From Lytechinus pictus (taxonomy: Eukaryota), in contig NC_087258.1 of assembly GCF_037042905.1 (NCBI RefSeq), positions 24,552,001 through 24,616,000 of the forward strand: a stretch of 64,000 bases of DNA. The letters are read 5' to 3'. Below are positions 5,551 to 55,400 of this stretch, in pieces (within the stretch, counting starts at the first letter, position 1; the number at the start of each line of letters is the position of its first letter). The notes beneath the pieces were generated by a model that saw only the letters and a list, made by a program, of their open reading frames with translations, ran no database searches and was not told where the DNA came from. The translations under genes were made by a program, and so were the position numbers.

Positions 5551-7864
5551 ATGAAGCAATTAGTTCTACTTCTCCTTCTCGGCTTCGCCGGTTTTTCATC
5601 GGCCCAAGTTTTCGGATTTGGTGGCTGTCCTGAGGTGCGTTTAGCCGAGGACTTCCAGCTTGACCGCTACCTGGGTCGTTGGTATGAAATCACAAAGTTC
5701 TACGCTTCCTTCGAGGCTGGTCTTTCGTGCGTGACGGCCGAGTATCGACCAGGAGATGATGGTCAAATCCTTGTCATCAACACCGGACGAACGCGAGATG
5801 GCGAGGCGACGAGCACCATTCTGGGGGAAATCCTACAACCTAACCCGGACGAAGGAGCAAAGCTGCAGGTCCAATTCTTTAACAGACCTGGTAAGTTTTT
5901 GTTCATCATTCTCACCAACAATACGAGATGTATCTTTTTAAACCGTATTCACATTATTCTAGGGAGTCTAAAATGCGAATTTGATTCTGACGAAGAAAAA
6001 ATAGGAGAAGAATAGAAGAAAAGACAAAAGAGCTAAAATGATATCCTTTTCTGAATATGCCTCTATCACAAATTAGATTTCCATTTTCAAAAAGATTATT
6101 TTTGCTCGATCTTTGATCGCTCGCATTTTTTCATACAGTGTGCCACCTTTTGGCGTGCCCCAGGGCTCACGACTCGGTCCCTTGCTTTTTGCATTATACA
6201 CAAGTAGCCTTATTAATAGCACTCAAAATAATTTTCCCGAAGTTTCTTGTCATTGTTATGCCGACGACACACAATTGTATATATCTTTTAGGCCATCTTC
6301 TATACCTCTGCAGACACAAGTGTTTCAAGGCTAGAACAATGTATCATTTTTATTCGTAGCTGGATGCTCAATAATAATCTGAAATTAAATGATAGCAAAA
6401 GTGAGTTTTTGCTCATTGGCGCCTCACAGCAGATCTCTAAAATTGATATCAACTGTATAAAAATTGGAGTATCCAATGTCAACCCATCTGATACTGCAAG
6501 GAATTTAGGAGTTTATTTTGATACAAACCTCAATATGGAAACCCAAGTCACGGATGTATGCAAATCAACATATTATCTCCTCTATATAACCTTCGGCGCA
6601 TTCGCAAATACTTTGATCAAGAAAGTATCAAACTGGTGGCACATGCTCTGATTACAAGTAAGCTTGACTACTCTAATGGTTTGTTGTTTGGAATGCCTGA
6701 TAATCTTATTTCTAAGTTACAAAGAGTCCAAAATTCATGTGCAAGACTTATCTACCGTGTCCCAAAGTTCAGTTCCACTACACCTCTTCTGAGAGAACTC
6801 CACTGGTTGCCTGTACGTCAAAGAATTTCATTCAAAATTCTGTTAATTGTATATAAATCATTAATCGGTCAAGCCCCACATTACATTACATAATTACACA
6901 AACTTAAAACCCAATCACACAGTCGAAGCCTGCGAAGTTCCACAGATAAATTATTGTTTCAGATCCCATTTCACAAAACAAAAGTCATACTTGGTGATCG
7001 TGCATTTGCACTTGCTGCCCCCCCCCAAAAAAAAATATATATATAAATATATATTTTTAATGTATAAACAGTTCGTTGAAGAACAGAGTAATGTGATGGT
7101 GAAAGTTGTAAAGATCCAAACTTGTTCAATGTTGTATACAATAATTATGAACAAGCATTACTATTTTCACAATGAGGGAGAGGAAGAGTAATTACCTCAG
7201 CCCCTGGCCAGCAATGCACCCAAAAAGAAAAGAAAGAAAGAAAGAAAGAATCAAACAAACAAAACGCAATCTCATTTTGTATACCGATGTTTAAATATTT
7301 CCACCGTCTGTTTTCCATCTTTCAGGGCAAACAGGCGAGTACTGGGTTCTAGATGTGGACTATGACAGTTATGCTCTGGTACACGGATGCACAGAAATCT
7401 TCTTTGGTTGGTTTAACTTCCAAAACAACTGGGTTCTCGCCCGTGATCCGTTCCCGTCTGAAGACGTCATCCAGAATGCTTTGAGAAAGTTTGGAGAACA
7501 GGGCATCAATGTGGACAAGTTCATCAGAGCCGATCAAACGAACTGCGAGACAGAACCACCACGTCCAACAGAGAGGCCTGGTACTTATAGACCACGCCCA
7601 TCCGAAGGCACTGACAGACCACGCCCCTCAGAGGGAACCGACAGGCCACGCCCATCCGAAAATCCTGACACTGAAAGACCACGTCCATCAGAAGGCACTG
7701 ACAGACCACGCCCCTCAGAGGGAACCGACAGGCCACGCCCATCCGAAAATCCTGACACTGAAAGACCACGTCCATCAGAAGGCACTGACAGACCACGCCC
7801 CTCAGAGGGAACCGACAGACCACGCCCTACAGAGCCACCAGCATCTGAAAGACCGCGCCTTTAA
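5551..7864 (+). CDS. Apolipoprotein D-like lipocalin 1 with C-terminal Pro/Arg/acidic tandem repeat; exons 5551-5890 and 7326-7864; 292 aa
   Basis: Signal peptide MKQLVLLLLLGFAGFSSA|Q. Lipocalin motifs YLGRWYEI, YWVLDVDYDSYALVHGC, WVLAR and DQTNC; four Cys in ApoD spacing. Phase-1 intron: GTAAGT donor at 5891, pyrimidine tract + CAG acceptor ending 7325. The spliced frame is open (879 nt) to TAA at 7862-7864. Confidence 0.93.
6139..7019 (+). mobile_element. Degenerate non-LTR retrotransposon (L2/CR1-group) reverse transcriptase fragment in the intron of lipocalin 1
   Basis: Motifs GVPQGSRLGPLLFALY, CYADDTQLY, LKLNDSKSEFL, ARNLGVYFD, LITSKLDYSN, LQRVQNSCARL and LRELHWLPVRQRISFKIL are spread over three frames (frameshifted). 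Confidence 0.92.
7588..7835 (+). repeat. Coding minisatellite: 27+27+33 nt subunits forming an 87-nt higher-order unit, about 2.7 copies
   Basis: Reads (RPRPSEGTD)(RPRPSEGTD)(RPRPSENPDTE) twice, then two more 9-aa units. The two 9-aa subunits use different synonymous codons, and that pattern is preserved between higher-order copies. Confidence 0.95.
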
Positions 7865-37400: not shown

Positions 37401-40400
37401 ACACTGTCTCACCCTTTCTTTTTGTACATCATTCTACCAATCTCAGGCGCTCATCCTTGAACGATTCACCTTTTACTCTGTAGTAGCTACATGTATATCT
37501 CCTTTAAAGTCATCAATTTCATATATGTATGAATATATTATTGGCATTTTTATTATATTTTCACTGTTTTTATCATGCATCTGATTGCGGTTTTGATGCT
37601 GGAGGCAATATGTCTTAGGGTTGTCTGTCTGTATGTCTTTCCATCCCATGTTTGTTTTCATGCATCCAGACATAATTATTACCTGGGGGGTATTCTCGAA
37701 AAGTCTCATAAGTTTCGTCATAACTTTCCTTATAAGTTACCCATTTAATGGAACGCTAATGGACCTCCAAATTCGTATTCTGAAAACTCTATTAGCGCTC
37801 AATTATTCTCCCTTTAGGCCACTCCCCTACTGAGCCAACTTGGCCAATTAAATGCGCTCTTACAACGTAAAATTTTCTACTAGCCCGCAGTGTCTCTTCA
37901 CTTTGCTGGCTTGCAGTGCAGCGCCCAGCTACAGGTGCACTGCGCCACAATCTTGATACAAATAATTTTTGCTGAAAAATAATGCTAAAAGTGTTTGCAT
38001 CAGAGATTAGAGTTTGTTATGTTGTTGAAGTTAACTGTTGTCTTGATCAACTTCAGACTTGCCTGATGCATACACAGAAGAGTCACAGTGACATTCATTT
38101 GACACAGATTTGGGACATAGTGACCTAGGGCCTGTTACACCAAGCATTGCGATGTATTTCAGATATGAAAGAACAGTGCTGATTGGTTCTCGGTCAGTGT
38201 TTTGAACAAAATCTTGATTGGGTATTACCTTTTTGCGAGTAATTGCAAACCTTTGTGTTAGTAAGTATGGAGCAATGGACTGGATTCGATATTTGACCAG
38301 CCACTCCCAAATCTGACAAAGAGGGAAGGTTCTCTCAAAAAGGCCCAAATAATTATTTGGTCTTCAAAAGGGGAAAATAATCTGAAAGGGGGTCTCGAAG
38401 ATTTCATTTGATAAATGTGAATGTTTTTTGTTGTTGTAATTTGTAAAGATAAATAAAAGATGAGAGTATCTTTGATGCCATTTTTTCCTTACTGCTTAGA
38501 AGTTTCACCAATATTACACAGTGTGCTCACCTGATGCTTGAGGGAGCGCTTACTTCAAACTTTTTTTTCTCCTTAGTTTTTTATGCTCTCATTGAGTTTC
38601 ATTTACATGTACATTCAATCAAGTTATTAAATGGTTATTGTTGATCAATTTCACAAGTGATATATCAATTTAAAGCTTAGGATGTGCCTCTATCCTTGAA
38701 ACTAAATCAAAAACAAAAAATTCATCTACGACTACTTTCTGTTGGTTTTGGGGTGGCAGGCCACATATGGCAAGGTATTTGTGCTGGAATTAATTCAATA
38801 GTTTTATATTATTTTCCTTTTCAGGAGGGCTTTGAAGATCTAGCACAGCGTTCTCCCAGTGAGGCTCTTGCTTACTTTCTCGTCGAGAGGACACGTCTGT
38901 CTGATAACATAGCCACAGAGAGAAGGAAATCCCTCACCAATGAATCGGCCAAGAATCACCTCGATCAGGTAAAGAATGTCTTTCACTAGAACTAAGATCA
39001 ATTCTAAATGAGATGAAATCAATGTTATGATATGTGATAGGTCTATGGCTTCTTAAAATTGATTTTAGCCACAGAGAGAAGGAAATCCCTCACAAATGAA
39101 TCAGCCAAGAATCACCTTGATCGGGTACACTGATTCACTAAGAGTTAAGATAAATTTTTATTGAGATGAAATCAATGTTAAATCTATGATTTATCGAAAT
39201 TGTTTTTTTTTTTGGTATATTGTCACCCAAATGGGACAAATAAAACAGGGCAAAACAAATATCCAAAGCTCCATCAAGATCACAGCAACATGACATCCAC
39301 AACCATGTCTTTCAATGTCCTTTGATGTACTTAAACCCAGTGTTGAATAATCACCCCTTTTTAGTCAAAACTGTACTTGTAGGCGTAGTTATGCTGTTAG
39401 TCAGTCCACCAAAGTTATACACAAGTTCTCCTTGTCATGTATCAGGTTCAGAGAGATCAGATTGGTAAGCTGGAGAAGGAGAAGATCCACCTGGAGCAGG
39501 AGAACAGGCAGCAGATCCAGCGAGTCAAGGAGCTTGAGCTTGAACTCAAGATGATCAAGAACAGGCTGGAGAAAGAGAAGGAGACGCATCATAAGGAGGT
39601 GGAAAAGGTCCAGAAAAAGGCTGGTAGGTAGCGTAGAATACCTAGTTCTAGCAGGGGTGTGAGAGTTCAGATTTTTATCTGATTTCAGATTTTTTTCATT
39701 TTGATTTTCAGCTTAATTTCAGCTTATTTTTGGCTTTCCTCTGTACAAAAAGTATGGGAGCTCTTTCTATTTCAGACTTTTTCTACAAGTTTCAGCTTTT
39801 TTCAGATCTTTTTATTTGTGACCACTCACACCCCTGTTCTAGGCTAGTTCTAATTTACACTTAGCTTCTTGCAGTTGGAATTCATTTCCAGAAGCTTCTC
39901 GGTAATATTTCATCTAAAGTACAGACAGAAATACGAACAAGGAGAGTAGAAACCAATTTGCAGAAAGGGCATGTACTCTCCTTGTTCGTATTTCTGTCTG
40001 TACTTTAGATGAAAGATTACAGATCAGCTTCTGGGAGTGAATTCCTACTTGGAGATGCTAAGTGTAAATTAGAACTAGGTATTACCACTACAAGTCAAAT
40101 GTCAAAGTACACAGCTAATTATTGGTTTGTACATGTACATTGTACACTTCTTGTCTCTATGCAGTGCGTCCCACAAAAAAGGAAACCCGTTTTCAGAGAT
40201 ACATGTAGGTGTCACAATGATTAATATGTTTTTACTATAAATTTGATACTCCTGGCAAGAGTAAGAGTGGAATCTCGTCTCTCATTTGATACCAACAGAT
40301 TAGCAAATCGTTCACGCATGCCAGATTACAAACAATAAATATCGAGGCATATTAGAAACGATTTGCGCAGAAACTTACGGGTGAATCTGAATCCATTCTC

Positions 40401-43400
40401 ATTTCAAGCAACAGTGAGAGAAGATTAACAAATAATACAAAAGAAACTAATGAGCCAGTCGTCGAATATGCAAGGTCGTCGTATCACCAACCAATCTTGT
40501 CCAATTTTTCTGCGCAACCTGGTTTTGACATTAAAATTTCAAACTTGTCTTGCTCATTAATGCGTGAAGTGGTCGTCTCATATTAGGTATCAAAATAAAG
40601 AGGAATAGTGGAATTATATGATTATGTAAATGAAATATCATAATTCATTTTCCTTTTGATTAAAAAGACATGGGAATTCCTTTTTTTCTGGGACGCACAT
40701 TGTATCTGTCTTTACTGCAGATGAAATATTATGAAGCACATTGCACAATCCTAATGTGATTGATGTGATCGATGAATAAATTATAATAGCATTTGATATG
40801 GTCATCCAAACTTTAAAATCTTAATTATCAAAGTTTTTAAAAATAGTGGTATACATACTAAAATAAAATATTTCAATCTATTTTGAGCCTCCCTGTAGGG
40901 AGTAAAAACAAACTAAATTTGAAATGATAATGTCATCATTAACTGTTATTTGTATGTGATTTGGACTTTACTCCTACCACAAGGCTTGCAGTTGTGCATA
41001 ATTTAGATTTTGGTATTCTTAGCATTATGCCGAGCTGTATAGATAATTGTACCTCTTGGAATTTTCATAGTTAAATGTAACATGCGAATTGTACAAAAAT
41101 CTGGTCATAGCCAGATGGTATACTGTCCGGCAGGCTTTAGTGTAGATTTGAACACTATGGGTGTTGGGTCAAAGGTCGCAGTTCTTGCATATTATTAAGT
41201 ACCCTTATCTTTCTTGCTGTAGATGAACAATTACAGAACAGCTCTGGTGAGGAATCCCAGTTGAGGGAGGCTAAGCGTAAATTAGAACAAGGGCTCACCA
41301 CCATGAAATACCGGTTGAAAACCAGTGAAGAGGAGAAGGAAAAGATAACGAAAGAGGTATGTTTTGAACATCATTTTACACTTTTATTGAATCTTTTTTT
41401 TTTTTTTTTCATGTGCTGAGAACAGACTTTATTAATCTGGCAAGGACGTTCCTGGGTTCCGTAACACAAAACCTAGCAATGATCGTAGAACATTTTTCCA
41501 CGATTGATTCCATTGACTACAATGTACAATCAATCGTGAAAATCAAGCTTACGATCAATTGCTAACCTTTGTGTTACGGGCCTCAGGATCAATATGAGTT
41601 ATGATGAATATTCCTTGCCCATTGATGGTGTGTGTGTGTGTCCATCCATCGTTGGTGGTTCCATTCTATGGGCGATGTCATAGCTCGTCTCACAAACCGA
41701 TTAAGCCATAACACCAAATCCCGTGAAAATTGGCCTTATGGAATCTTCATTGTCAAGTAAACCACTTTCTATTTATCGCTTTCTATGTCTTTGTTTAAAG
41801 ATATAATGTTGTATGCACCTTATTATGTCAATGGCAACAGGACAGACCCACTGTAAAATTCCAGAAAAACTCTATAAACAAATTTTACAAATGAAAAATC
41901 CAACATGGGGCATATTGGCACTCCCCCTTGGGGTTGCATGTAAATTTTTGGGAAATTTATATCTGACTTTGATCATGTGCAATCATTGGCAAGTGAATAG
42001 CTGAATGCGCAGTTATGTTTAATGGGGTCAAGCATGGCTGTGCAGGGGTACATGTACTTCATGGTAGTTGCCATAATGGCAAAGTCAACATCGTTGTAAC
42101 AAAGAATACTTGTAAGTCTGTATGAAGAACAGGCCCCTGTTTAGCAATTGTTTGAAAAATGTGACACTAATGCATTTAGATCCTGAAATATTAAACACTG
42201 TTGGGAAAGATAACAGAACAGAATAGAAAACATGAAAGTCGGTTCATCCTGAACCAAAAACTGTGTATATTACGATAAATAGGGATTGAGGAAAATTAAT
42301 GTTGTTCCTTCACTCATTGAAACAGTATTGATCTTTCAAGTTTTTCTGAGTGAGCACACATTAAAGGCAAGATTGTCAATCATCATATTATAAGGAGATA
42401 TGTTCATACCACATTGTGAGTTTTAGCATTTTTTGTTCACATGTATGTATTTCATTGTGTCCTGACTAACTTTTTGAAAACTTGTGTTTTTACCCTTGAC
42501 AACATTTGTATGTTTTATGTGCTATTTTTGTATGTATTTGATATTCATATTCATTTTATTATTTTTCTTCATTAAAGAAATTAAAAATTATCTACTCACA
42601 CAGTAATAATAATAAATACAGCATTTATTATGCGTTATCTACATACTTTTTTAATTATTATTACTGTGTGGGTAGATCATTTTTAATTTCTGGTACATGC
42701 AAAACAAAAATTGTGAACTCAGAATATTTGCAGATTTCTACTTAAAAATGAAGACCCCAAATATCAAGCCCTTTTCTTTCAGTTATTCGTCCCTTATAGG
42801 CTCTGGCTATTGGAGAAGTATTTTAAAGCCACTGCAATAAAAGAGCTTTATAGCATTTTAGCACTTGAAATAGAAATGGGCACAATGCATTAGAGTACTA
42901 ATCCTCCATCATTAAGTCATTCTCAATAGGTTAGTTTGGATTAGTTGGATAACATTGCAATCATTTTATCTGTAATTCCTCCTTATCCTGATGCACCTCG
43001 GAATAGTGTACTAAATAGATGGGCATATTAAATGCTGTACGGTATTTGTTATTATTGTTATTATTTTTATTGTATGGTTGGATCATTGATTTTTAATTTC
43101 TAATACACGCAAAACGAAAATTGGTGAACTCAGAATATTTGTAGAATTCTACTTGAAAATGAAGACCCCAAATATCAAGCCCTTTATTTCACATTAATAA
43201 CAATCCCTTTTAGGCTTAGGCTATCGCAGAAGTACTTTAAAGCCACTGCAATAAAAAGGGCTTTATAGACTTTGAGCACTTGAAATCGAAATGGGCACAA
43301 TGCATTAGAGTACTAATCCTCCATCATTAAGTCAATCCCAATAGGTTAGTTTGGAGTACTTAGTTGGATAACATTGTGTAATCTTTTTAAATGATGATGC

Positions 43401-46400
43401 TTTATTGCACGACAGATATCTGATTCAAATACATTGTATATGTACATGTTCTTTTAGAGTTTAGAGAGTATCGTTAATTGAAAATGTAATAGTCTCCTTG
43501 GTATATTCCTGTTTGATACTTGAAAATGATGGGCTATTTTTAGAATTGGACAGTCATCTTCTCTCTTCTGGGGCCCGTTGCAGAAAGAGTTGCAATCAAT
43601 CCCAACTCTAAAAATCATGTGAAACTTGATTTTCAACCAATCAACAGCGCGCATTTTGGACTTGCGATTGATATTTTGACTTGCGTTTAAACGCAACTCT
43701 TTCTGCAATGGACCCCAGATGTGGTATTGGTAGAATATTAATTGGGGTGGCTGGGGTAGCTATTGGTCATCTGTGCTTCTATTCATCCCTGACCATGATT
43801 AGGGACAAGCCATTGTCCACTCCCCCTTGGTTATTGATTAAATGACCCTTTTCAATTCAAAGCACCACTTGAATGGAAGTAACTGTGCATTATTGAAAAG
43901 AAATTCCTTCGAGTTTGATAGCGCTTTCAAAAAGACAGTGGTTGTTACTCATCCGATCAATATTTGGCTGGACATACATGTACATGTATGTTTGTATGCT
44001 GTACAGAGGAGTTTGCCTGAATCTGTTAAGATTACTACTCATAGATACACAAAGTGGAATCATGTGGAATTTCAATTTGGATTAACTTTTGAGTTTGAAG
44101 ATACCTTTGAACTAGTCAGATTTTTGTGGAACATACTCAATAGCTACATGTACAAGTGTAGTTTTAATTTTGGTTTATGATGCCTTGCCTGGAGATGTCC
44201 TACAGTGTATTTTCAATCGTGCAGTGTGGTATTTATTTTGACATTTCAAGAAAGTGTTGATTATGCCATGCATTTTGGAGGCTGTTTAGATCAAACGAAA
44301 GATCACATTAAGTGCGGCAAGTCAACATTGCAGGCTAAGAGCAACAACTTGATTGGATTTTTAATACCGATTGGCTTTTGCAAGGCATCTATTTATTTCT
44401 GTTTGGAGTGATTTTTTCACCAAAGTGAAAAGGAAAAAAAAAAACATGGCTGCCTACCAAGATAGTAGGGTAAGTGATTAAAAAACAGTTTGATTTTCAA
44501 AATTTTGTTTTGTGTATTTTTTGAAAATGTCTTTCTGTGGAACTACTACCCAAAATACAATGGCCTGTATTCTGAAGTCATGTTCAGCTTGCCTTGGTCT
44601 AACTCTGCTAATTTTATGGGAGCCAAAAACTAAAAAATCCTCCTTATATTGTATATTTCTTACTATTTTGTGTCTGTTTGCTTTCATAATGAATAAAATA
44701 TTTCAGTTATCATTCTCAGACAGTTATAAATGACTTGAGTCTCATAAGAGTTAATAAATTGAACATGTACCAGAGATGTTTGCCTCAATTGGCTCTCCAT
44801 AGTTAAACCACAACTTTAAACCAGGGTTTGATTTAAACCCGAGAATACTGGCCAATATGCTTTAGGTTTAAGCGATATAGGGCCACATCTGCTATAAACA
44901 TTCTACACCAGGGTTACATGAATCACACTCCATTGGTCGTTATTAGATTGAATATCCCTTTTCTTTAAATTTAGGAAGGATGCTTTTTTGTGTCTCCTGA
45001 AAGGAACATGAATCAGAATAATATTTTGCAAATTTTAGTCTGTGATTATAAGACTTTTATCAAGAATATAGATGAAGAATACTAGAGGAGGCAGGGGAGG
45101 AGAAGGAGGATGAGGATGAAGGAGGATGAGGAAAAAAGGAGGAGAGGAGAACGAGAAAGGGAAGAAGGAGAAGATTTACTTCTAATTCGTCTAATGCCAA
45201 TTCGGCCAATTGCCAATTTGTGTACTATCTGTTCTGCCATCAGTTCGTCCACTATCCACATGGTCTAATTGGCAATTCGTCCACTCACCATTTCGTCAAA
45301 TAACGAGTTGGCCCAATAGCAATTTAGTCCATTTGGTCTAATTGGACTAAGTGTTAATTGTGCAAAATAAATATATTAGACCAACTGGTTATGAGACAAA
45401 ATAGTCATAGGCGAAATGGTGATTAGACGAAGTGATGATTGGACCAAATGATTGTTAGAAGAAATGTTGATGGATGGAATGGCATTAGACTATAAAATGA
45501 AAAGTAGACCATGTGAGTGGAGGAGTTGGCAGTAGACGAATTGGCAATTTACCAAGGAGAAAGAGAAGAAGAAAAAGGAGAAAGAGAAGTAGGAGGAAGA
45601 TGAAGGAATAGAAGAAAAGTAGTAGAAGAAGAAGAGGAAGAAGAAGAGAAGGAGATCATAAAAAGCGACTATACAGTGTTTGTATCTTTTGTGATATATG
45701 TGCCATTGTGTGTAGATATGCAGGACTTCACAACAATCTTTTGGTTGTATTGGATTTGGATCTCCCCAGGTAATCTTGCTTGTGGCCTTTCATCATCAAT
45801 CAAACCGACTTATTTTGTAAACTTGATGCTGCCCTCTGTAGTTCTAAAATCATTTTGTCAGTAGTACATAATTGTACATGTACCTATTCAACTATCAGTT
45901 TTCTTTTGAAATAAAATTTGTTACTTAAGGCTATTTTGTGACAGTATCACGAGGATTATTTTCACATTCATATTTTAAGCAAAAAAATAAAAAATATAAA
46001 AACCAAAAAAAAAATTGCCCTGAATATCTACTTTTACATGTTTATTCAAAAAATATTTCAACGAATTATTTTCCTACTATTTAGCTAGAAAGTCTTTCAG
46101 ATGCTTGACTGAGGTTTGTGGGAAATAGCGAAATAAAAAACATTTGAAAATTAGATGCTGAACAATTGTATTTGACATGTTACGCATAGATAGGAAATTA
46201 AAGATAGAAAAAAGTGCTAGTACATGTATATCAAGAGTTAATTTTTTTTTACAATTTTGTGAAACCTAAGTATCAAAATTAATTATTTGTTTTTTCAAAT
46301 CTAAGAGGGAAATTAAACAATACTTTAGAACAGAAAGTGTATTATAGAACAATATCATTTTCAAATATTGACTTGTATTTTTTTACCTTGCTTGAAAATA

Positions 46401-52400: not shown

Positions 52401-55400
52401 TTCCTTGTCTAAAAGTGAGCACAACACTCAGATGTGTGTTAAAATGAGAATTTTCTTAAATATGGATTGATGTGCACAATTTAACAGGAGGAAAGGAACA
52501 TGACAAAGCATTGGAGAAAGGGAGAATAAGGGGGTTTGAGAGAGTAGAAAAAGAGTGGTGTTGAGAAAGAGATTTAGTTACAAGAAAATGATAAACCACT
52601 TTAAAAATAAAAGTATGAAAAATAAATTCATGTAAAATCACATCCATGCACATTTATAACACACAAGTCTATGAGGTGTTTTAAAACACGTTTTTTTTGT
52701 AAAAAAAACGGGTGTTTTAAAACGCGTTTTAAAACATGTTTTAAAACACACCGTTTAAAACGCGCCAACCCTGCATTGGGTAGTTAATTTTCAGCTTCAT
52801 TTCAGCTTATTTTAGTTTTCCTCTGTACAAAAACGATGGGAGCTCTTTCTGTTTCAGCTTTTTTTCAACACTCTTCAGCCTTTTTCAGATCTTTTTATTT
52901 GTGACCATCCGCACCCCTGATTAATGTATAATGTATTAATGACCTTGGAATGTTGCATTTTATTGCAAGATTTGTTTGACATTTTTTTGCCATCAAGGTT
53001 TTTAAAAAATATGAAGACAGTTGACCAGTATATATCTTGACTACCACCACCAATAACAAACAACACCAGCACCACCAACACTAACACCATCACTAGAATA
53101 TAATATTGATATTAATTGGAATCATTATTAAATTAGTAAAAAAAAAGCGTATTAGACCAGTTTAAGATACTTAAAGAGAAGCTAATCCTATTTCTGCTAA
53201 ATTGTTTTAAAGTGTCTACAGTTAAGCAAAAATATTGATTACCCATGTTTGATTAATGACATTGATAAGAGTAAAATATTTCCCTTGGGGTTTTTCTTTT
53301 ATTTCCTCTCAAACCAGTGAACCTCTTGACGTTCACTTCTTTGAATTCACAGAGAATTATCCATTGATTTTGACTATGATTAGAACAATAAAGATTAAAT
53401 TCTCTGCTAGCTAGACTTTGCATTGTTTTGTGTTACACTGTAGCTCACATTGAGGTCACACTGGGGCCTGGGAGATCTAAGCGTATTGTTGACATTGTTA
53501 TTTGTTACGCTTGGTCTGAGGCAAAAATCAATATTACAGTTGACTTCTACCAGCATCGAAGTGACTCCTATCCACGTGCATGTACTGTACTGGGCACATT
53601 ATATCGACATGGATATATCATGGACTTTCTTGGTGTTCATAGGCTGCTGTTAATTAGTGTAGACGTCTTTCTTTCGACGGTGTGAAAACTGTGATTTAGT
53701 GTGATTTTGGAAAATTTCTTCCTCATTCCTGCTTCGTGGTGGTATGTACAAATTGCACACTGTAATTGATATTCGGTTAGAATGACTTTGAGGTGATGCT
53801 GCCTTGCATATTGTACATACAGTATGTCAGTGTACATGTATTTGAGCTGGATATTTGACGTTATTATCTACTAGAATAAATAGTGTTTAAGCGATGCATT
53901 AAACATGCGTACAACGTGTACGTATAATGAATGCAATGCGATGTGCAGCATAGAGCACAATGATTCTCAAAAGACGTCATAATGAACTACGTGTATTAAA
54001 GTCATATTTCAACGATCAAATTTGATCTTACGAAGTGATGATGCCATGTGACATGACTTGCTCAATCAAATTTCTCACTTTCTTTAGGGGAGGGGGTTGG
54101 ATAGATGATGATGGCTTTATTTCATGGAATACCAGAAATATTTCACTTGCTACATATGGCCAATATTCCACTCATCTGTGATTCGTGGAATATTTCCCCA
54201 AACTCTTCAAATATTTCTGGTATTCCATTCTGAGCCATCCAATATAATATAAATATCATTCACTACAATGAGGATTGTTTTTTAGTTGTTGTTTTTGGCA
54301 TGGGAAAGTCGTAATGGTATTAGATAATTTTCATAGACCTATAGAATTTACATTTGAGAATGTACATTTAAGAGATTCCCTTTAACATTTGAGCACCTGA
54401 TCAGGGCACATGTACTTGTACATGTAGCTGTGCAAAAAGCCAAGGTAAAGTTCTTATAATATTCAGAGATGCCACCCTTTAGGCTTTTGCCTGACTTTAG
54501 GCCCTGACAACTTCCCTATAGATTCAGGCATTTTAAGGCTTTCTATTGTACTTCACAATGCTGCCTTTACCATATTCCACCTTCTTTCAGTCCCAGTGAG
54601 TCAAACCAACTGGCACTCCTGATTGTGGTTATTAGTGATGAACGTCTTTAATTTAACACTTCCATAGTCTGTGTTTGTGGAAACTTGAAGGGGGCGTCGT
54701 GGTTTAGTGGTTAAGACCCTCATCTTTCAATCTGAGGGACGTGGGTTTGATTCCAAGCCATGACGTATTTTACTTGAGCAAGAGATTTACCCACATAGTG
54801 CTGCACTCAACCCAGGTGAGGTAAATGGGTACCGGCAGGAAGTGATTCATCAAAAAGCTTTGAGCATCGGAATCGGTAGACTAGCTTTAATAGCCAGGGT
54901 AATATAGTAGCACCTTGGGCACCTAACAAGGTGGATATGTGCGCTATATATCCTATATCATTTTATTTTATTACTTGTACAGGTTAGAATTCAATTGTAA
55001 GATCATTTTCCATCTTGTCCTATTTTGTGTTTGCACAAACCAGGTGAAAGAGCTAACAGAAAGCTTGGACGTTGAGAGGAAACGACGGTCGTCTTACGAA
55101 GGAACGATCATCAAGCTGAAACACCTGCTCGATACCAATCGTAAAACCATCTCAACAATCGAGGTAATCAAGCAAATTTTGTTACATATTTCATGCTCTA
55201 ACGATGTTGTTTACATGCACTTGTCATTTGTCACTTCCAGTTTTAGTATGTAGGGGAGAAAGAACAAGCCATTTTCAGCTTTGTAAGGGATGTGTCCATA
55301 CTTTTTGAGAATTTGTGTGCTTGTAATGAAAATTAAGAACGGGTATACAAATGAACTGTTTGTTATTGTAGGCTATGCTAAAAGTACCTTTTATAAAATC

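What the first reader, a model, noticed from the sequence alone, without database searches (positions are those of the whole stretch)
39844..41356. Pseudo-exon locked in a hairpin whose antisense arm is also complementary to the real downstream exon
Seen: 39990-40090 is a diverged copy of the acceptor and 5' half of exon 41223-41356 (TAG|ATGAAAGATTACAGATCAGC..GCTAAGTGTAAATTAGAACTAGG versus TAG|ATGAACAATTACAGAACAGC..GCTAAGCGTAAATTAGAACAAGG). If spliced at 40009 it reads DERLQISFWE-stop. Directly upstream is an inverted copy, and the perfect 41-bp part of the stem covers exactly the pyrimidine tract and AG while the outer arms have diverged. A third acceptor remnant (CTGTCTTTACTGCAG|ATGAAA) lies near 40720. 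Inference: the RNA hairpin masks a poison acceptor, and the antisense arm could alternatively pair with the true exon, giving a competing-structure splicing switch. Gene conversion near the loop is the neutral alternative.
Basis: partly seen in the sequence, partly recalled or inferred. Interest (0 to 1): 0.7.

Follow-up and report, generated by a model that had tools for sequence, protein, structure and literature searches.

The report
Lineage-specific hairpin over decayed exon copy
In an intron of a sea-urchin coiled-coil gene (CCDC30 orthologue), a dead partial copy of the next exon has been duplicated in reverse right beside itself, so the RNA should fold into a very stable 105-bp hairpin. 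The sister species has the dead copy but not the reverse copy, so this looks like replication debris rather than a splicing switch.

Summary
Arms 39844-39948 and 39974-40078 form a 105-nt inverted repeat (90% complementary, 25-nt loop; RNA MFE -155.5 kcal/mol, z = -19.6). The right arm is a decayed direct copy of the acceptor and 5' half of exon 41223-41356, with an in-frame TGA. A third remnant lies at 40705-40731.

The gene is the CCDC30 orthologue of Lytechinus pictus, and the feature lies in intron 4.

L. variegatus has the pseudo-exon (same TGA) and the third remnant in direct orientation. It has no inverted arm and no unusual structure (z = -0.86). S. purpuratus has no copies at all. The hairpin is therefore a single-copy inverted duplication found only in L. 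pictus among the species compared. It has a 4-nt microhomology at its outer junction and was later hit by a young MITE.

The proposed switch is thermodynamically implausible. In a 1.8-kb fold the left arm pairs only with the right arm, and forcing it onto the real exon costs 101 kcal/mol.

Arm differences are clustered in the middle (P = 2.5e-4). Both pseudo-splice sites therefore lie in perfect duplex. This fits arm homogenisation by template switching but does not exclude selection for masking.

RNA reads were too sparse to test splicing or editing. Verdict: real, mostly neutral, modest interest.

The parts
39446..39623 (+). Exon 4 of the CCDC30 orthologue; donor GT at 39624-25
   Evidence: Spliced translation equals NCBI L. 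pictus model P0045 and matches L. variegatus and S. purpuratus proteins. RNA reads cover it at 3-6x on the + strand.
39637..39650 (+). Outermost piece of the left (antisense) arm, now cut off by MITE1. AATA at 39637-40 is the junction microhomology.
   Evidence: Perfect 14-nt complement of 40070-40083 (I9). L. variegatus reads gtagaataTGATAT here, with no inverted copy.
39652..39836 (.). MITE1: 185-bp hAT-like MITE inserted into the left arm, with TSD TTCTAG at 39646-51 and 39837-42
   Evidence: More than 1000 candidate copies in the genome at 97-99% identity. Other copies have 6-8 bp TSDs. Absent from the L. variegatus orthologous site.
39844..39948 (+). Left arm: reverse-complement copy of the pseudo-acceptor and pseudo-exon
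   Evidence: No counterpart in L. variegatus or S. purpuratus.
39949..39973 (+). Loop. Its first 14 nt (GAAACCAATTTGCA) are still part of the inverted copy; AGGGCATG is ancestral intron.
   Evidence: Comparison with L017:7296-7325.
39974..40078 (+). Right arm: ancestral direct partial copy of exon 5. Pyrimidine tract, AG at 40007-08, pseudo-exon 40009-40078, TGA at 40038-40, weak donor GTATTA at 40079.
   Evidence: Orthologous copy in L. variegatus at L017:7319-7407 plus 7631-7665, with the same TGA.
40160..40702 (.). MITE2 (about 545 bp, TA TSD) separating the pseudo-exon from the third remnant
   Evidence: About 1000 candidate copies at 83-87% identity matching 40157-40705. Absent at the L. 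variegatus site.
40705..40731 (+). Third remnant: acceptor-like TCTGTCTTTACTGCAG plus ATGAAATATTA, a decayed second direct copy
   Evidence: 89% complementary to the left arm (I4). Conserved in L. variegatus at L017:7752-7778 (D1). Faint similarity continues to about 40790.
41223..41356 (+). Real exon 5. 41243-41291 is the part complementary to the left arm.
   Evidence: Single copy in the genome at blastn sensitivity.

Best explanation
This is a single-copy inverted duplication, seen in L. pictus only, of an already dead partial duplicate of exon 5. It lies in intron 4 of the Lytechinus pictus CCDC30 orthologue. The inferred history has five steps. (1) After the split from the Strongylocentrotus lineage, the 3' end of intron 4 plus the 5' half of exon 5 was duplicated twice in direct orientation into intron 4, and both copies decayed (shown). 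(2) Near or after the L. pictus / L. variegatus split, about 130 nt of the first copy was copied in reverse just upstream. The likely cause is a replication template switch using the 4-nt microhomology AATA/TATT (mechanism inferred). (3) A 16-nt deletion shortened the loop (inferred). (4) Arm-to-arm template switching or gene conversion re-homogenised the inner 41 bp and outer 22 bp (inferred). (5) MITE2, and very recently MITE1, inserted (shown). In the pre-mRNA the two arms almost certainly fold into a long hairpin as soon as they are transcribed. That incidentally buries the pseudo-exon's splice sites. There is no evidence that this is needed or that it regulates exon 5. Complementarity of the left arm to the real exon is a by-product of descent.
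For: The hairpin is real and very stable. It is single-copy in the 812-Mb genome, so it is not a TE family. L. variegatus intron 4 has the pseudo-exon (same TGA) and the third remnant in direct orientation. It has no inverted repeat, and its fold z-score is -0.86. S. purpuratus intron 4 (about 650 nt) has no copy at all. The junction reads gtagAATA|cctag in L. pictus against gtagAATAtgatat in L. variegatus. Only 3 of the 11 arm differences are G-U and the other 8 break pairing; both arms changed, about 6 on the left and 3 on the right when polarised with L. variegatus and the real exons. A young MITE (97-99% identical to its family) and an 11-nt bulge are tolerated in the outer stem. The alternative pairing with exon 5 is 101 kcal/mol worse. 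The NCBI model P0045 joins 39623 to 41223 directly. Inverted repeats with arms of 40 nt or more occur about once per 5 kb in this window. Template switching is documented to create long hairpins and to homogenise imperfect inverted-repeat arms (PMC8794818, PMC5453318, PMC13100816 abstracts).
Against: The arm differences are significantly clustered: P(span<=42) = 2.5e-4 and P(inner run>=41) = 0.003. The two perfect segments coincide with the pseudo-acceptor and the donor-proximal exon end, which is also what selection for masking would give. In the middle 42 nt the arms differ more (11) than the right arm differs from L. variegatus (6). The duplication could therefore predate the species split and have been lost in L. 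variegatus. No third Lytechinus-level genome was available to polarise gain against loss. No usable RNA evidence was obtained.
Confidence: 0.7

Rival explanations
1. Static masking. The inverted copy was retained because the hairpin hides both splice sites of a poison pseudo-exon (70 nt, in-frame TGA) and so prevents wasteful NMD isoforms. It is a constitutive silencer, not a switch.
For: The perfect 41-bp inner duplex covers the pyrimidine tract and AG. The perfect 22-bp outer duplex covers the exon end next to the donor. Mismatches are confined to the exon middle. Hairpin pair probability is 0.91 in context. L. variegatus, which lacks the hairpin, has the pseudo-exon broken by its own 223-bp MITE-like insertion. 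Sea urchins have large populations in which weak selection can act (general knowledge).
Against: The ancestor and L. variegatus carry the pseudo-acceptor unmasked. The pseudo-donor is weak, matching 5 of 9 positions of CAG|GTAAGT and lacking +5G, against 6-8 of 9 for this gene's real donors (read). Eight of 11 arm differences break pairs. A MITE insertion and an 11-nt bulge in the outer stem are tolerated. Clustering is equally explained by template-switch homogenisation (PMC13100816).
Confidence: 0.15
2. Competing-structure switch. The left arm alternates between the pseudo-exon and the real exon 5, or the third remnant, as a docking site with three selectors, and so tunes exon 5 inclusion.
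For: The left arm is formally complementary to three targets: 90% over 105 nt, 89% over 27 nt and 76% over 49 nt. The left arm and exon 5 form a -78 kcal/mol duplex in isolation. Ivanov and Pervouchine 2018 (PMC6071210) proposed that duplications create docking/selector sets.
Against: The local hairpin wins by 101 kcal/mol. It has a 25-nt loop against a 1.3-kb distance and forms before exon 5 is transcribed. The duplicate 'exons' are dead, with TGA and TAA in frame. The structure is not conserved in L. variegatus or S. purpuratus. Skipping exon 5 (134 nt) would shift the reading frame. No isoform lacking it was seen in the L. pictus, L. variegatus and S. purpuratus proteins inspected.
Confidence: 0.03
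3. dsRNA substrate. The hairpin is processed into endo-siRNAs (hpRNA-like) or edited by ADAR. The outer left arm (39844-39865) is 20/22 complementary to exon 5 (41266-41287), which would allow self-targeting of the host mRNA.
For: There is a perfect 41-bp duplex and a 22-bp perfect outer duplex. Generic miRNA-precursor models match the stem below threshold. Drosophila hpRNAs arise by inverted duplication of their targets (own knowledge). Template switching can create new miRNAs (PMC10710096).
Against: No small-RNA or editing data are available. Rfam hits are all far below gathering scores, fall on both strands and belong to unrelated families, so they reflect only 'a perfect hairpin'. Intronic read depth was about zero, so no A>G signal could be assessed. 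The structure is not conserved.
Confidence: 0.05
4. Assembly artefact: a fold-back chimera from long-read sequencing.
For: Palindromic duplications with short spacers are a known artefact class (own knowledge). No DNA reads were laid here.
Against: The arms differ at 11 of 105 positions and by an 11-nt indel. One arm carries a MITE with a proper TSD. The loop holds sequence present only in inverted form. Artefactual fold-backs give identical arms.
Confidence: 0.02

Closest known systems
Template-switch / inverted-duplication origin of hairpins (Loytynoja & Goldman 2017, PMC5453318; Monttinen & Loytynoja 2022, PMC8794818; de novo miRNAs, PMC10710096)
   Same: A reverse-complement copy of adjacent sequence appears in one lineage and creates a long, near-perfect stem in one step. 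There is microhomology at the junction, and later homogenisation of the arms is possible.
   Different: The arm is about 130 nt, much longer than typical short template-switch events. The copied sequence is an exon remnant with splice signals. No functional RNA product is shown.
Docking-site / selector competing structures at tandemly duplicated, mutually exclusive exons (Dscam, 14-3-3 xi, ATE1; evolutionary model of Ivanov & Pervouchine 2018, PMC6071210)
   Same: There are tandem partial duplicates of an exon with its upstream intron. One upstream element is complementary to all copies.
   Different: The duplicates are truncated and carry stops. Pairing covers the exon itself rather than intronic selectors. 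Energies are hugely unequal (-150 against -78 kcal/mol). The direct copies came first and the 'docking' copy later. It is not conserved even in the sister species.
Splice-site sequestration by local stem-loops (e.g. MAPT exon 10 5'ss hairpin, SMN2 TSL2; review PMC11802352)
   Same: A local stem contains a splice site and is expected to hinder U2AF or U1 access.
   Different: Those stems are short (about 6-20 bp), conserved and experimentally validated on real exons. This one is 105 bp, species-specific and untested, and sits on a pseudo-exon.
Intronic inverted-repeat TEs (inverted Alus, MITEs) forming dsRNA
   Same: A long intronic dsRNA stem, common in this genome at about one inverted repeat of 40 nt or more per 5 kb in the window.
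   Different: This hairpin is single-copy, derived from the host exon, and has no TIR/TSD signature of its own.

Membership tests
Docking/selector mutually exclusive exon cluster | Two or more intact homologous exons of compatible length and phase that are alternatively included | tested here: not met
   Pseudo-exon 40009-40078 is 70 nt with TGA at 40038-40. The L. variegatus third copy has TAA after 4 codons. Only 41223-41356 is in the proteins.
Docking/selector mutually exclusive exon cluster | One docking element complementary to several selectors | tested here: met
   Left arm against right arm 90%/105 nt, third remnant 89%/27 nt, exon 5 76%/49 nt.
Docking/selector mutually exclusive exon cluster | Alternative pairings of comparable stability, so that either can form | tested here: not met
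   Duplexes are -150.4 against -78.2 kcal/mol. In the 1.8-kb fold, 97/105 positions pair with the right arm and 0 with exon 5. Blocking the right arm costs 101 kcal/mol.
Docking/selector mutually exclusive exon cluster | Conservation of the complementary elements across related species | tested here: not met
   No inverted arm in L. variegatus. No copies in S. purpuratus.
Splice-site-sequestering stem-loop | A stable stem that includes the splice site | tested here: met
   AG 40007-08 lies inside the perfect 41-bp stem and the exon end 40057-40078 inside the perfect 22-bp stem. Mean pair probability is 0.91. Prediction only.
Splice-site-sequestering stem-loop | Splice-site use changes when the stem is disrupted and is restored by compensatory changes | not testable with these tools
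   Needs a minigene or in-vivo mutagenesis.
Poison (NMD) exon | Inclusion seen in transcripts | tested here: inconclusive
   Exon depth was only 2-6x, and no junction rows for this gene appeared among those shown. NCBI model P0045 skips it. No truncated product turned up in the protein search.
Template-switch / inverted duplication | Reverse-complement copy adjacent to its source, absent from the sister lineage | tested here: met
Template-switch / inverted duplication | Microhomology at the switch point | tested here: met
   AATA (39637-40) equals the reverse complement of TATT (40080-83) and is also the ancestral intron sequence gtagAATAtgat in L. variegatus. Four nt is short, so this is suggestive only.
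MITE / foldback transposon | Many genomic copies with TIRs and TSDs | tested here: not met
   The hairpin matches only itself in the 812-Mb genome. MITE1 and MITE2, by contrast, have about 1000 candidates each.
miRNA / hpRNA precursor | Match to a curated family, or small-RNA reads from the stem | tested here: not met
   Only sub-threshold, mutually inconsistent Rfam miRNA hits on both strands (24-56 bits against gathering scores of 63-107). Small-RNA reads were not testable.

The most novel reading that the evidence does not exclude
The hairpin is a newly evolved, selected silencer. A template-switch inverted duplication was fixed in L. pictus because it locks both splice sites of a poison pseudo-exon in perfect duplex (41 bp over the acceptor, 22 bp at the donor end) while the exon middle drifts. 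It would be a snapshot of how exon-duplication debris acquires a docking-like element complementary to all copies, the first step of the Ivanov-Pervouchine route to structure-controlled exon choice.
Probability: 0.12. Interest if true: 0.55.

Novelty: new member of a known kind. Interest (0 to 1): 0.25.

Why it matters
If it is neutral, it is a clean, datable example of how replication template switching turns exon-duplication debris into a 105-bp RNA hairpin within one species. It also warns that complementarity between an intronic element and a real exon can be pure ancestry. If the masking reading were true, it would show a species-specific RNA structure evolving to silence a cryptic poison exon. 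It would also give an early intermediate for docking/selector architectures, testable in a sea urchin that is amenable to transgenesis. Nothing here suggests a new kind of mechanism.

Tried and rejected
1. RNA reads. Three rRNA-depleted runs of organism A and one cDNA run of organism B were laid on 38600-44500 at 90% likeness. Output was dominated by MITE copies, with exon depth only 2-6x and unique intron depth near 0. There is therefore no test of 39623>40009 junctions, exon skipping or A-to-I editing.
2. The Pfam Taxilin hit on exon 1 (19 bits) was misleading. The true taxilin gene is on contig C4, and this gene is CCDC30/DUF4686.
3. The look-up of encoding contigs gave nothing for L. pictus proteins or for L. 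variegatus isoform X2. Isoform X1 worked.
4. I searched for truncated protein products ending in the pseudo-exon. Only the normal NCBI model was found, so this is uninformative.
5. I tested whether the diverged middle of the left arm was converted from another paralogue. Its derived states match the third remnant at 2 sites and the real exon at 1 site, so there is no single donor. Rejected.
6. A transposable-element origin of the hairpin is rejected, because it is single-copy.
7. The Rfam scan gave only generic sub-threshold miRNA-hairpin hits.
8. Earlier scan findings held nothing relevant.
9. No third Lytechinus-level genome was reachable, so gain in L. pictus against loss in L. variegatus remains open.
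Full report
**What is there**

The window carries a multi-exon coiled-coil gene on the + strand. Exons 1-5 are 34584-34754, 36042-36200, 38825-38968, 39446-39623 and 41223-41356, and the next exon is at about 55044-55181.

- A whole-library search with exon 1 found a 1061-aa S. purpuratus protein. Its relatives carry PF15742 (DUF4686) and are named CCDC30 in vertebrates.
- The spliced exons 1-5 are identical to the NCBI Lytechinus pictus model P0045.
- Downstream exons are identical to L. pictus P0029 and differ from L. variegatus at several residues.
- The window is therefore L. pictus, and the finding lies in intron 4 (39624-41222) of its CCDC30 orthologue.

**Check of the observation**

- The repeat finder gives arms 39844-39948 and 39974-40078: 105 nt, 90% complementary, with 25 nt between them.
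- Folded as RNA, the region gives -155.5 kcal/mol against -59.3 +/- 4.9 for shuffles (z = -19.6).
- The right arm is a direct diverged copy of the pyrimidine tract, AG and 5' half of exon 5.
- Joined to exon 4 at 40009 it reads DERLQISFWE-TGA.
- It ends in a weak donor, CTAG|GTATTA. This matches 5 of 9 consensus positions, against 6-8 of 9 for the gene's real donors.
- A third remnant at 40705-40731 is 89% complementary to the left arm.

- The 11 non-Watson-Crick positions all lie in 39866-39907. Both the inner 41 bp and the outer 22 bp are perfect.
- This clustering is non-random, P(span<=42) = 2.5e-4.
- Only 3 of the 11 are G-U.
- The left arm continues past an 11-nt bulge and a 185-bp MITE (39652-39836, TSD TTCTAG) to 39637-39650, which pairs with 40070-40083.

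**Repeats around it**

- The hairpin matches nothing else in the 812-Mb genome, so it is not a transposon.
- MITE1 has more than 1000 candidate copies at 97-99% identity. It is therefore a very recent insertion into the left arm.
- MITE2 (about 40160-40702, TA TSD, roughly 1000 candidates at 83-87%) separates the pseudo-exon from the third remnant.
- Inverted repeats with arms of 40 nt or more and spacers of 600 nt or less occur 12 times in the 64-kb window. Intronic hairpins as such are common here.

**Comparative evidence**

The L. variegatus locus (L017, GCA_018143015.1) aligns to the window at 76-91% in introns.

- Its intron 4 holds the pseudo-exon in direct orientation. The acceptor is ctttag|ATAAAAGATTAC at L017:7353/7354, with the same in-frame TGA.
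- That pseudo-exon is split by its own 223-bp MITE-like insertion.
- The third remnant is also present (L017:7752-7778).
- There is no inverted arm, no MITE1 and no MITE2. The region folds no better than shuffles (z = -0.86).
- S. purpuratus intron 4 is about 650 nt and has no copy of exon 5.

The direct partial duplications therefore arose in the Lytechinus lineage before the two species split. The inverted copy is present only in L. pictus.

The junctions look like this.

- At the outer junction L. pictus reads gtagAATA|CCTAGTTCTA and L. variegatus reads gtagAATAtgatatAGGGCGTG. AATA is also the reverse complement of TATT at the end of the source, which gives a 4-nt microhomology.
- The first 14 nt of the loop are the reverse complement of TGCTAATTGGTTTC. 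L. variegatus has this in direct orientation just upstream of the stem, while the L. pictus right copy has lost it, together with an adjacent TA, in a 16-nt deletion.
- This pattern fits a replication template switch or inverted duplication followed by a small deletion. Template switching is documented to create long hairpins in one step and to homogenise imperfect arms (PMC5453318, PMC8794818, PMC13100816).

**Timing**

I polarised the arm differences with L. variegatus and the real exons.

- About 6 changes fall on the left arm, 3 on the right, and 2 are unclear.
- In the middle 42 nt the arms differ at 11 sites, while the right arm differs from L. variegatus at 6.
- The inner 41 bp share at least one derived change.

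The simplest reading is a duplication about as old as the species split, with later re-homogenisation of both ends. Loss of the arm in L. variegatus cannot be excluded without another close genome.

**Does it act as a switch?**

- In isolation the left arm pairs with the right arm at -150.4 kcal/mol and with the exon-5 region at -78.2 kcal/mol.
- In a fold of 39600-41400, 97 of 105 left-arm positions pair with the right arm and none with exon 5 (mean pair probability 0.91).
- Only when the right arm is forbidden to pair do 43 positions pair with 41243-41291, at a cost of 101 kcal/mol.
- The local partner is 25 nt away and is transcribed 1.2 kb before exon 5.

A competing-structure switch is therefore not credible without an active unwinding factor. 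The complementarity to exon 5 follows from descent.

**Does it mask a poison exon?**

Physically it should, because both pseudo-splice sites lie in perfect duplex. That coincidence is the one point in favour of selection.

Several points count against it.

- The same pseudo-acceptor is unmasked in L. variegatus and was unmasked in the ancestor.
- The pseudo-donor is weak.
- Most arm differences break pairs.
- A MITE and a bulge are tolerated in the outer stem.
- Homogenisation by template switching explains perfect segments next to the loop.

**RNA evidence**

- Reads from four runs showed low + strand expression of exons 3-5 (2-6x).
- Unique intron depth was essentially zero, and there were large pile-ups on MITEs.
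- No junction rows for this gene were among those shown.
- The NCBI model joins 39623 to 41223.
- No truncated product was found.
- Rfam gave only generic sub-threshold miRNA-hairpin hits on both strands.

**Verdict**

The best explanation (about 0.7) is a neutral, L. pictus-only inverted duplication of exon-duplication debris that incidentally forms a hairpin. Static masking remains possible (about 0.15). The competing-structure switch is very unlikely (about 0.03). It is a new example of a known kind and of modest interest.

Noticed in passing
window 34584-41416 and 55044 onward: NCBI's L. pictus annotation splits the CCDC30 orthologue into two models. 'Beta-taxilin-like' (P0045, 282 aa) is exons 1-5 plus read-through into intron 5 (41357-41416). 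'CCDC30-like' (P0029, 882 aa) starts at the exon near 55044. L. variegatus (1136 aa) and S. purpuratus (1128 aa) have one gene spanning both, and the 13.7-kb intron 5 is the likely cause.
   Followed up: partly
window 39652-39836: A 185-bp MITE with TIR CAGGGGTGTGAGAG and 6-8 bp TSDs. It has more than 1000 candidate copies at 97-99% identity, so it appears recently active in L. pictus. It is abundant in RNA reads of both organism labels.
   Followed up: partly
window 40160-40702: An older MITE-like element of about 545 bp with a TA target duplication and TIR ...GTGCGTCCCA. It has about 1000 candidates at 83-87% identity and is absent at the orthologous L. variegatus site.
   Followed up: partly
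L017:7408-7630: L. variegatus has its own 223-bp MITE-like insertion (TIR GGGGCATTGCAAGA / TCTTGCAACACCCC) inside the orthologous pseudo-exon. It separates the pseudo-acceptor from the pseudo-donor.
   Followed up: partly
window 39485 and 39535: Every RNA read in all four runs differs from the reference here: A>G (Ile to Val) and T>G (synonymous). Both are the L. variegatus states. This is a reference minor allele or a haplotype difference, not editing, because organism B shows it too.
   Followed up: no
window 41459-41580 and 43570-43708: Strong read pile-ups (200-1300x) with heterogeneous loose ends mark further repeat families (TIR-like GGGGCC...GTTGCAGAAAGAGTTGCAATCAAT). Several opposite-strand joints around 41491-41587 point to hairpin-type copies.
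   Followed up: no
L017:7277-7325: In L. variegatus the first nucleotides of intron 4 (AGAGTAGAA) are complementary to TTCTACTCT just upstream of the pseudo-acceptor. A short pre-existing inverted repeat like this could have seeded the template switch in the L. pictus lineage.
   Followed up: no
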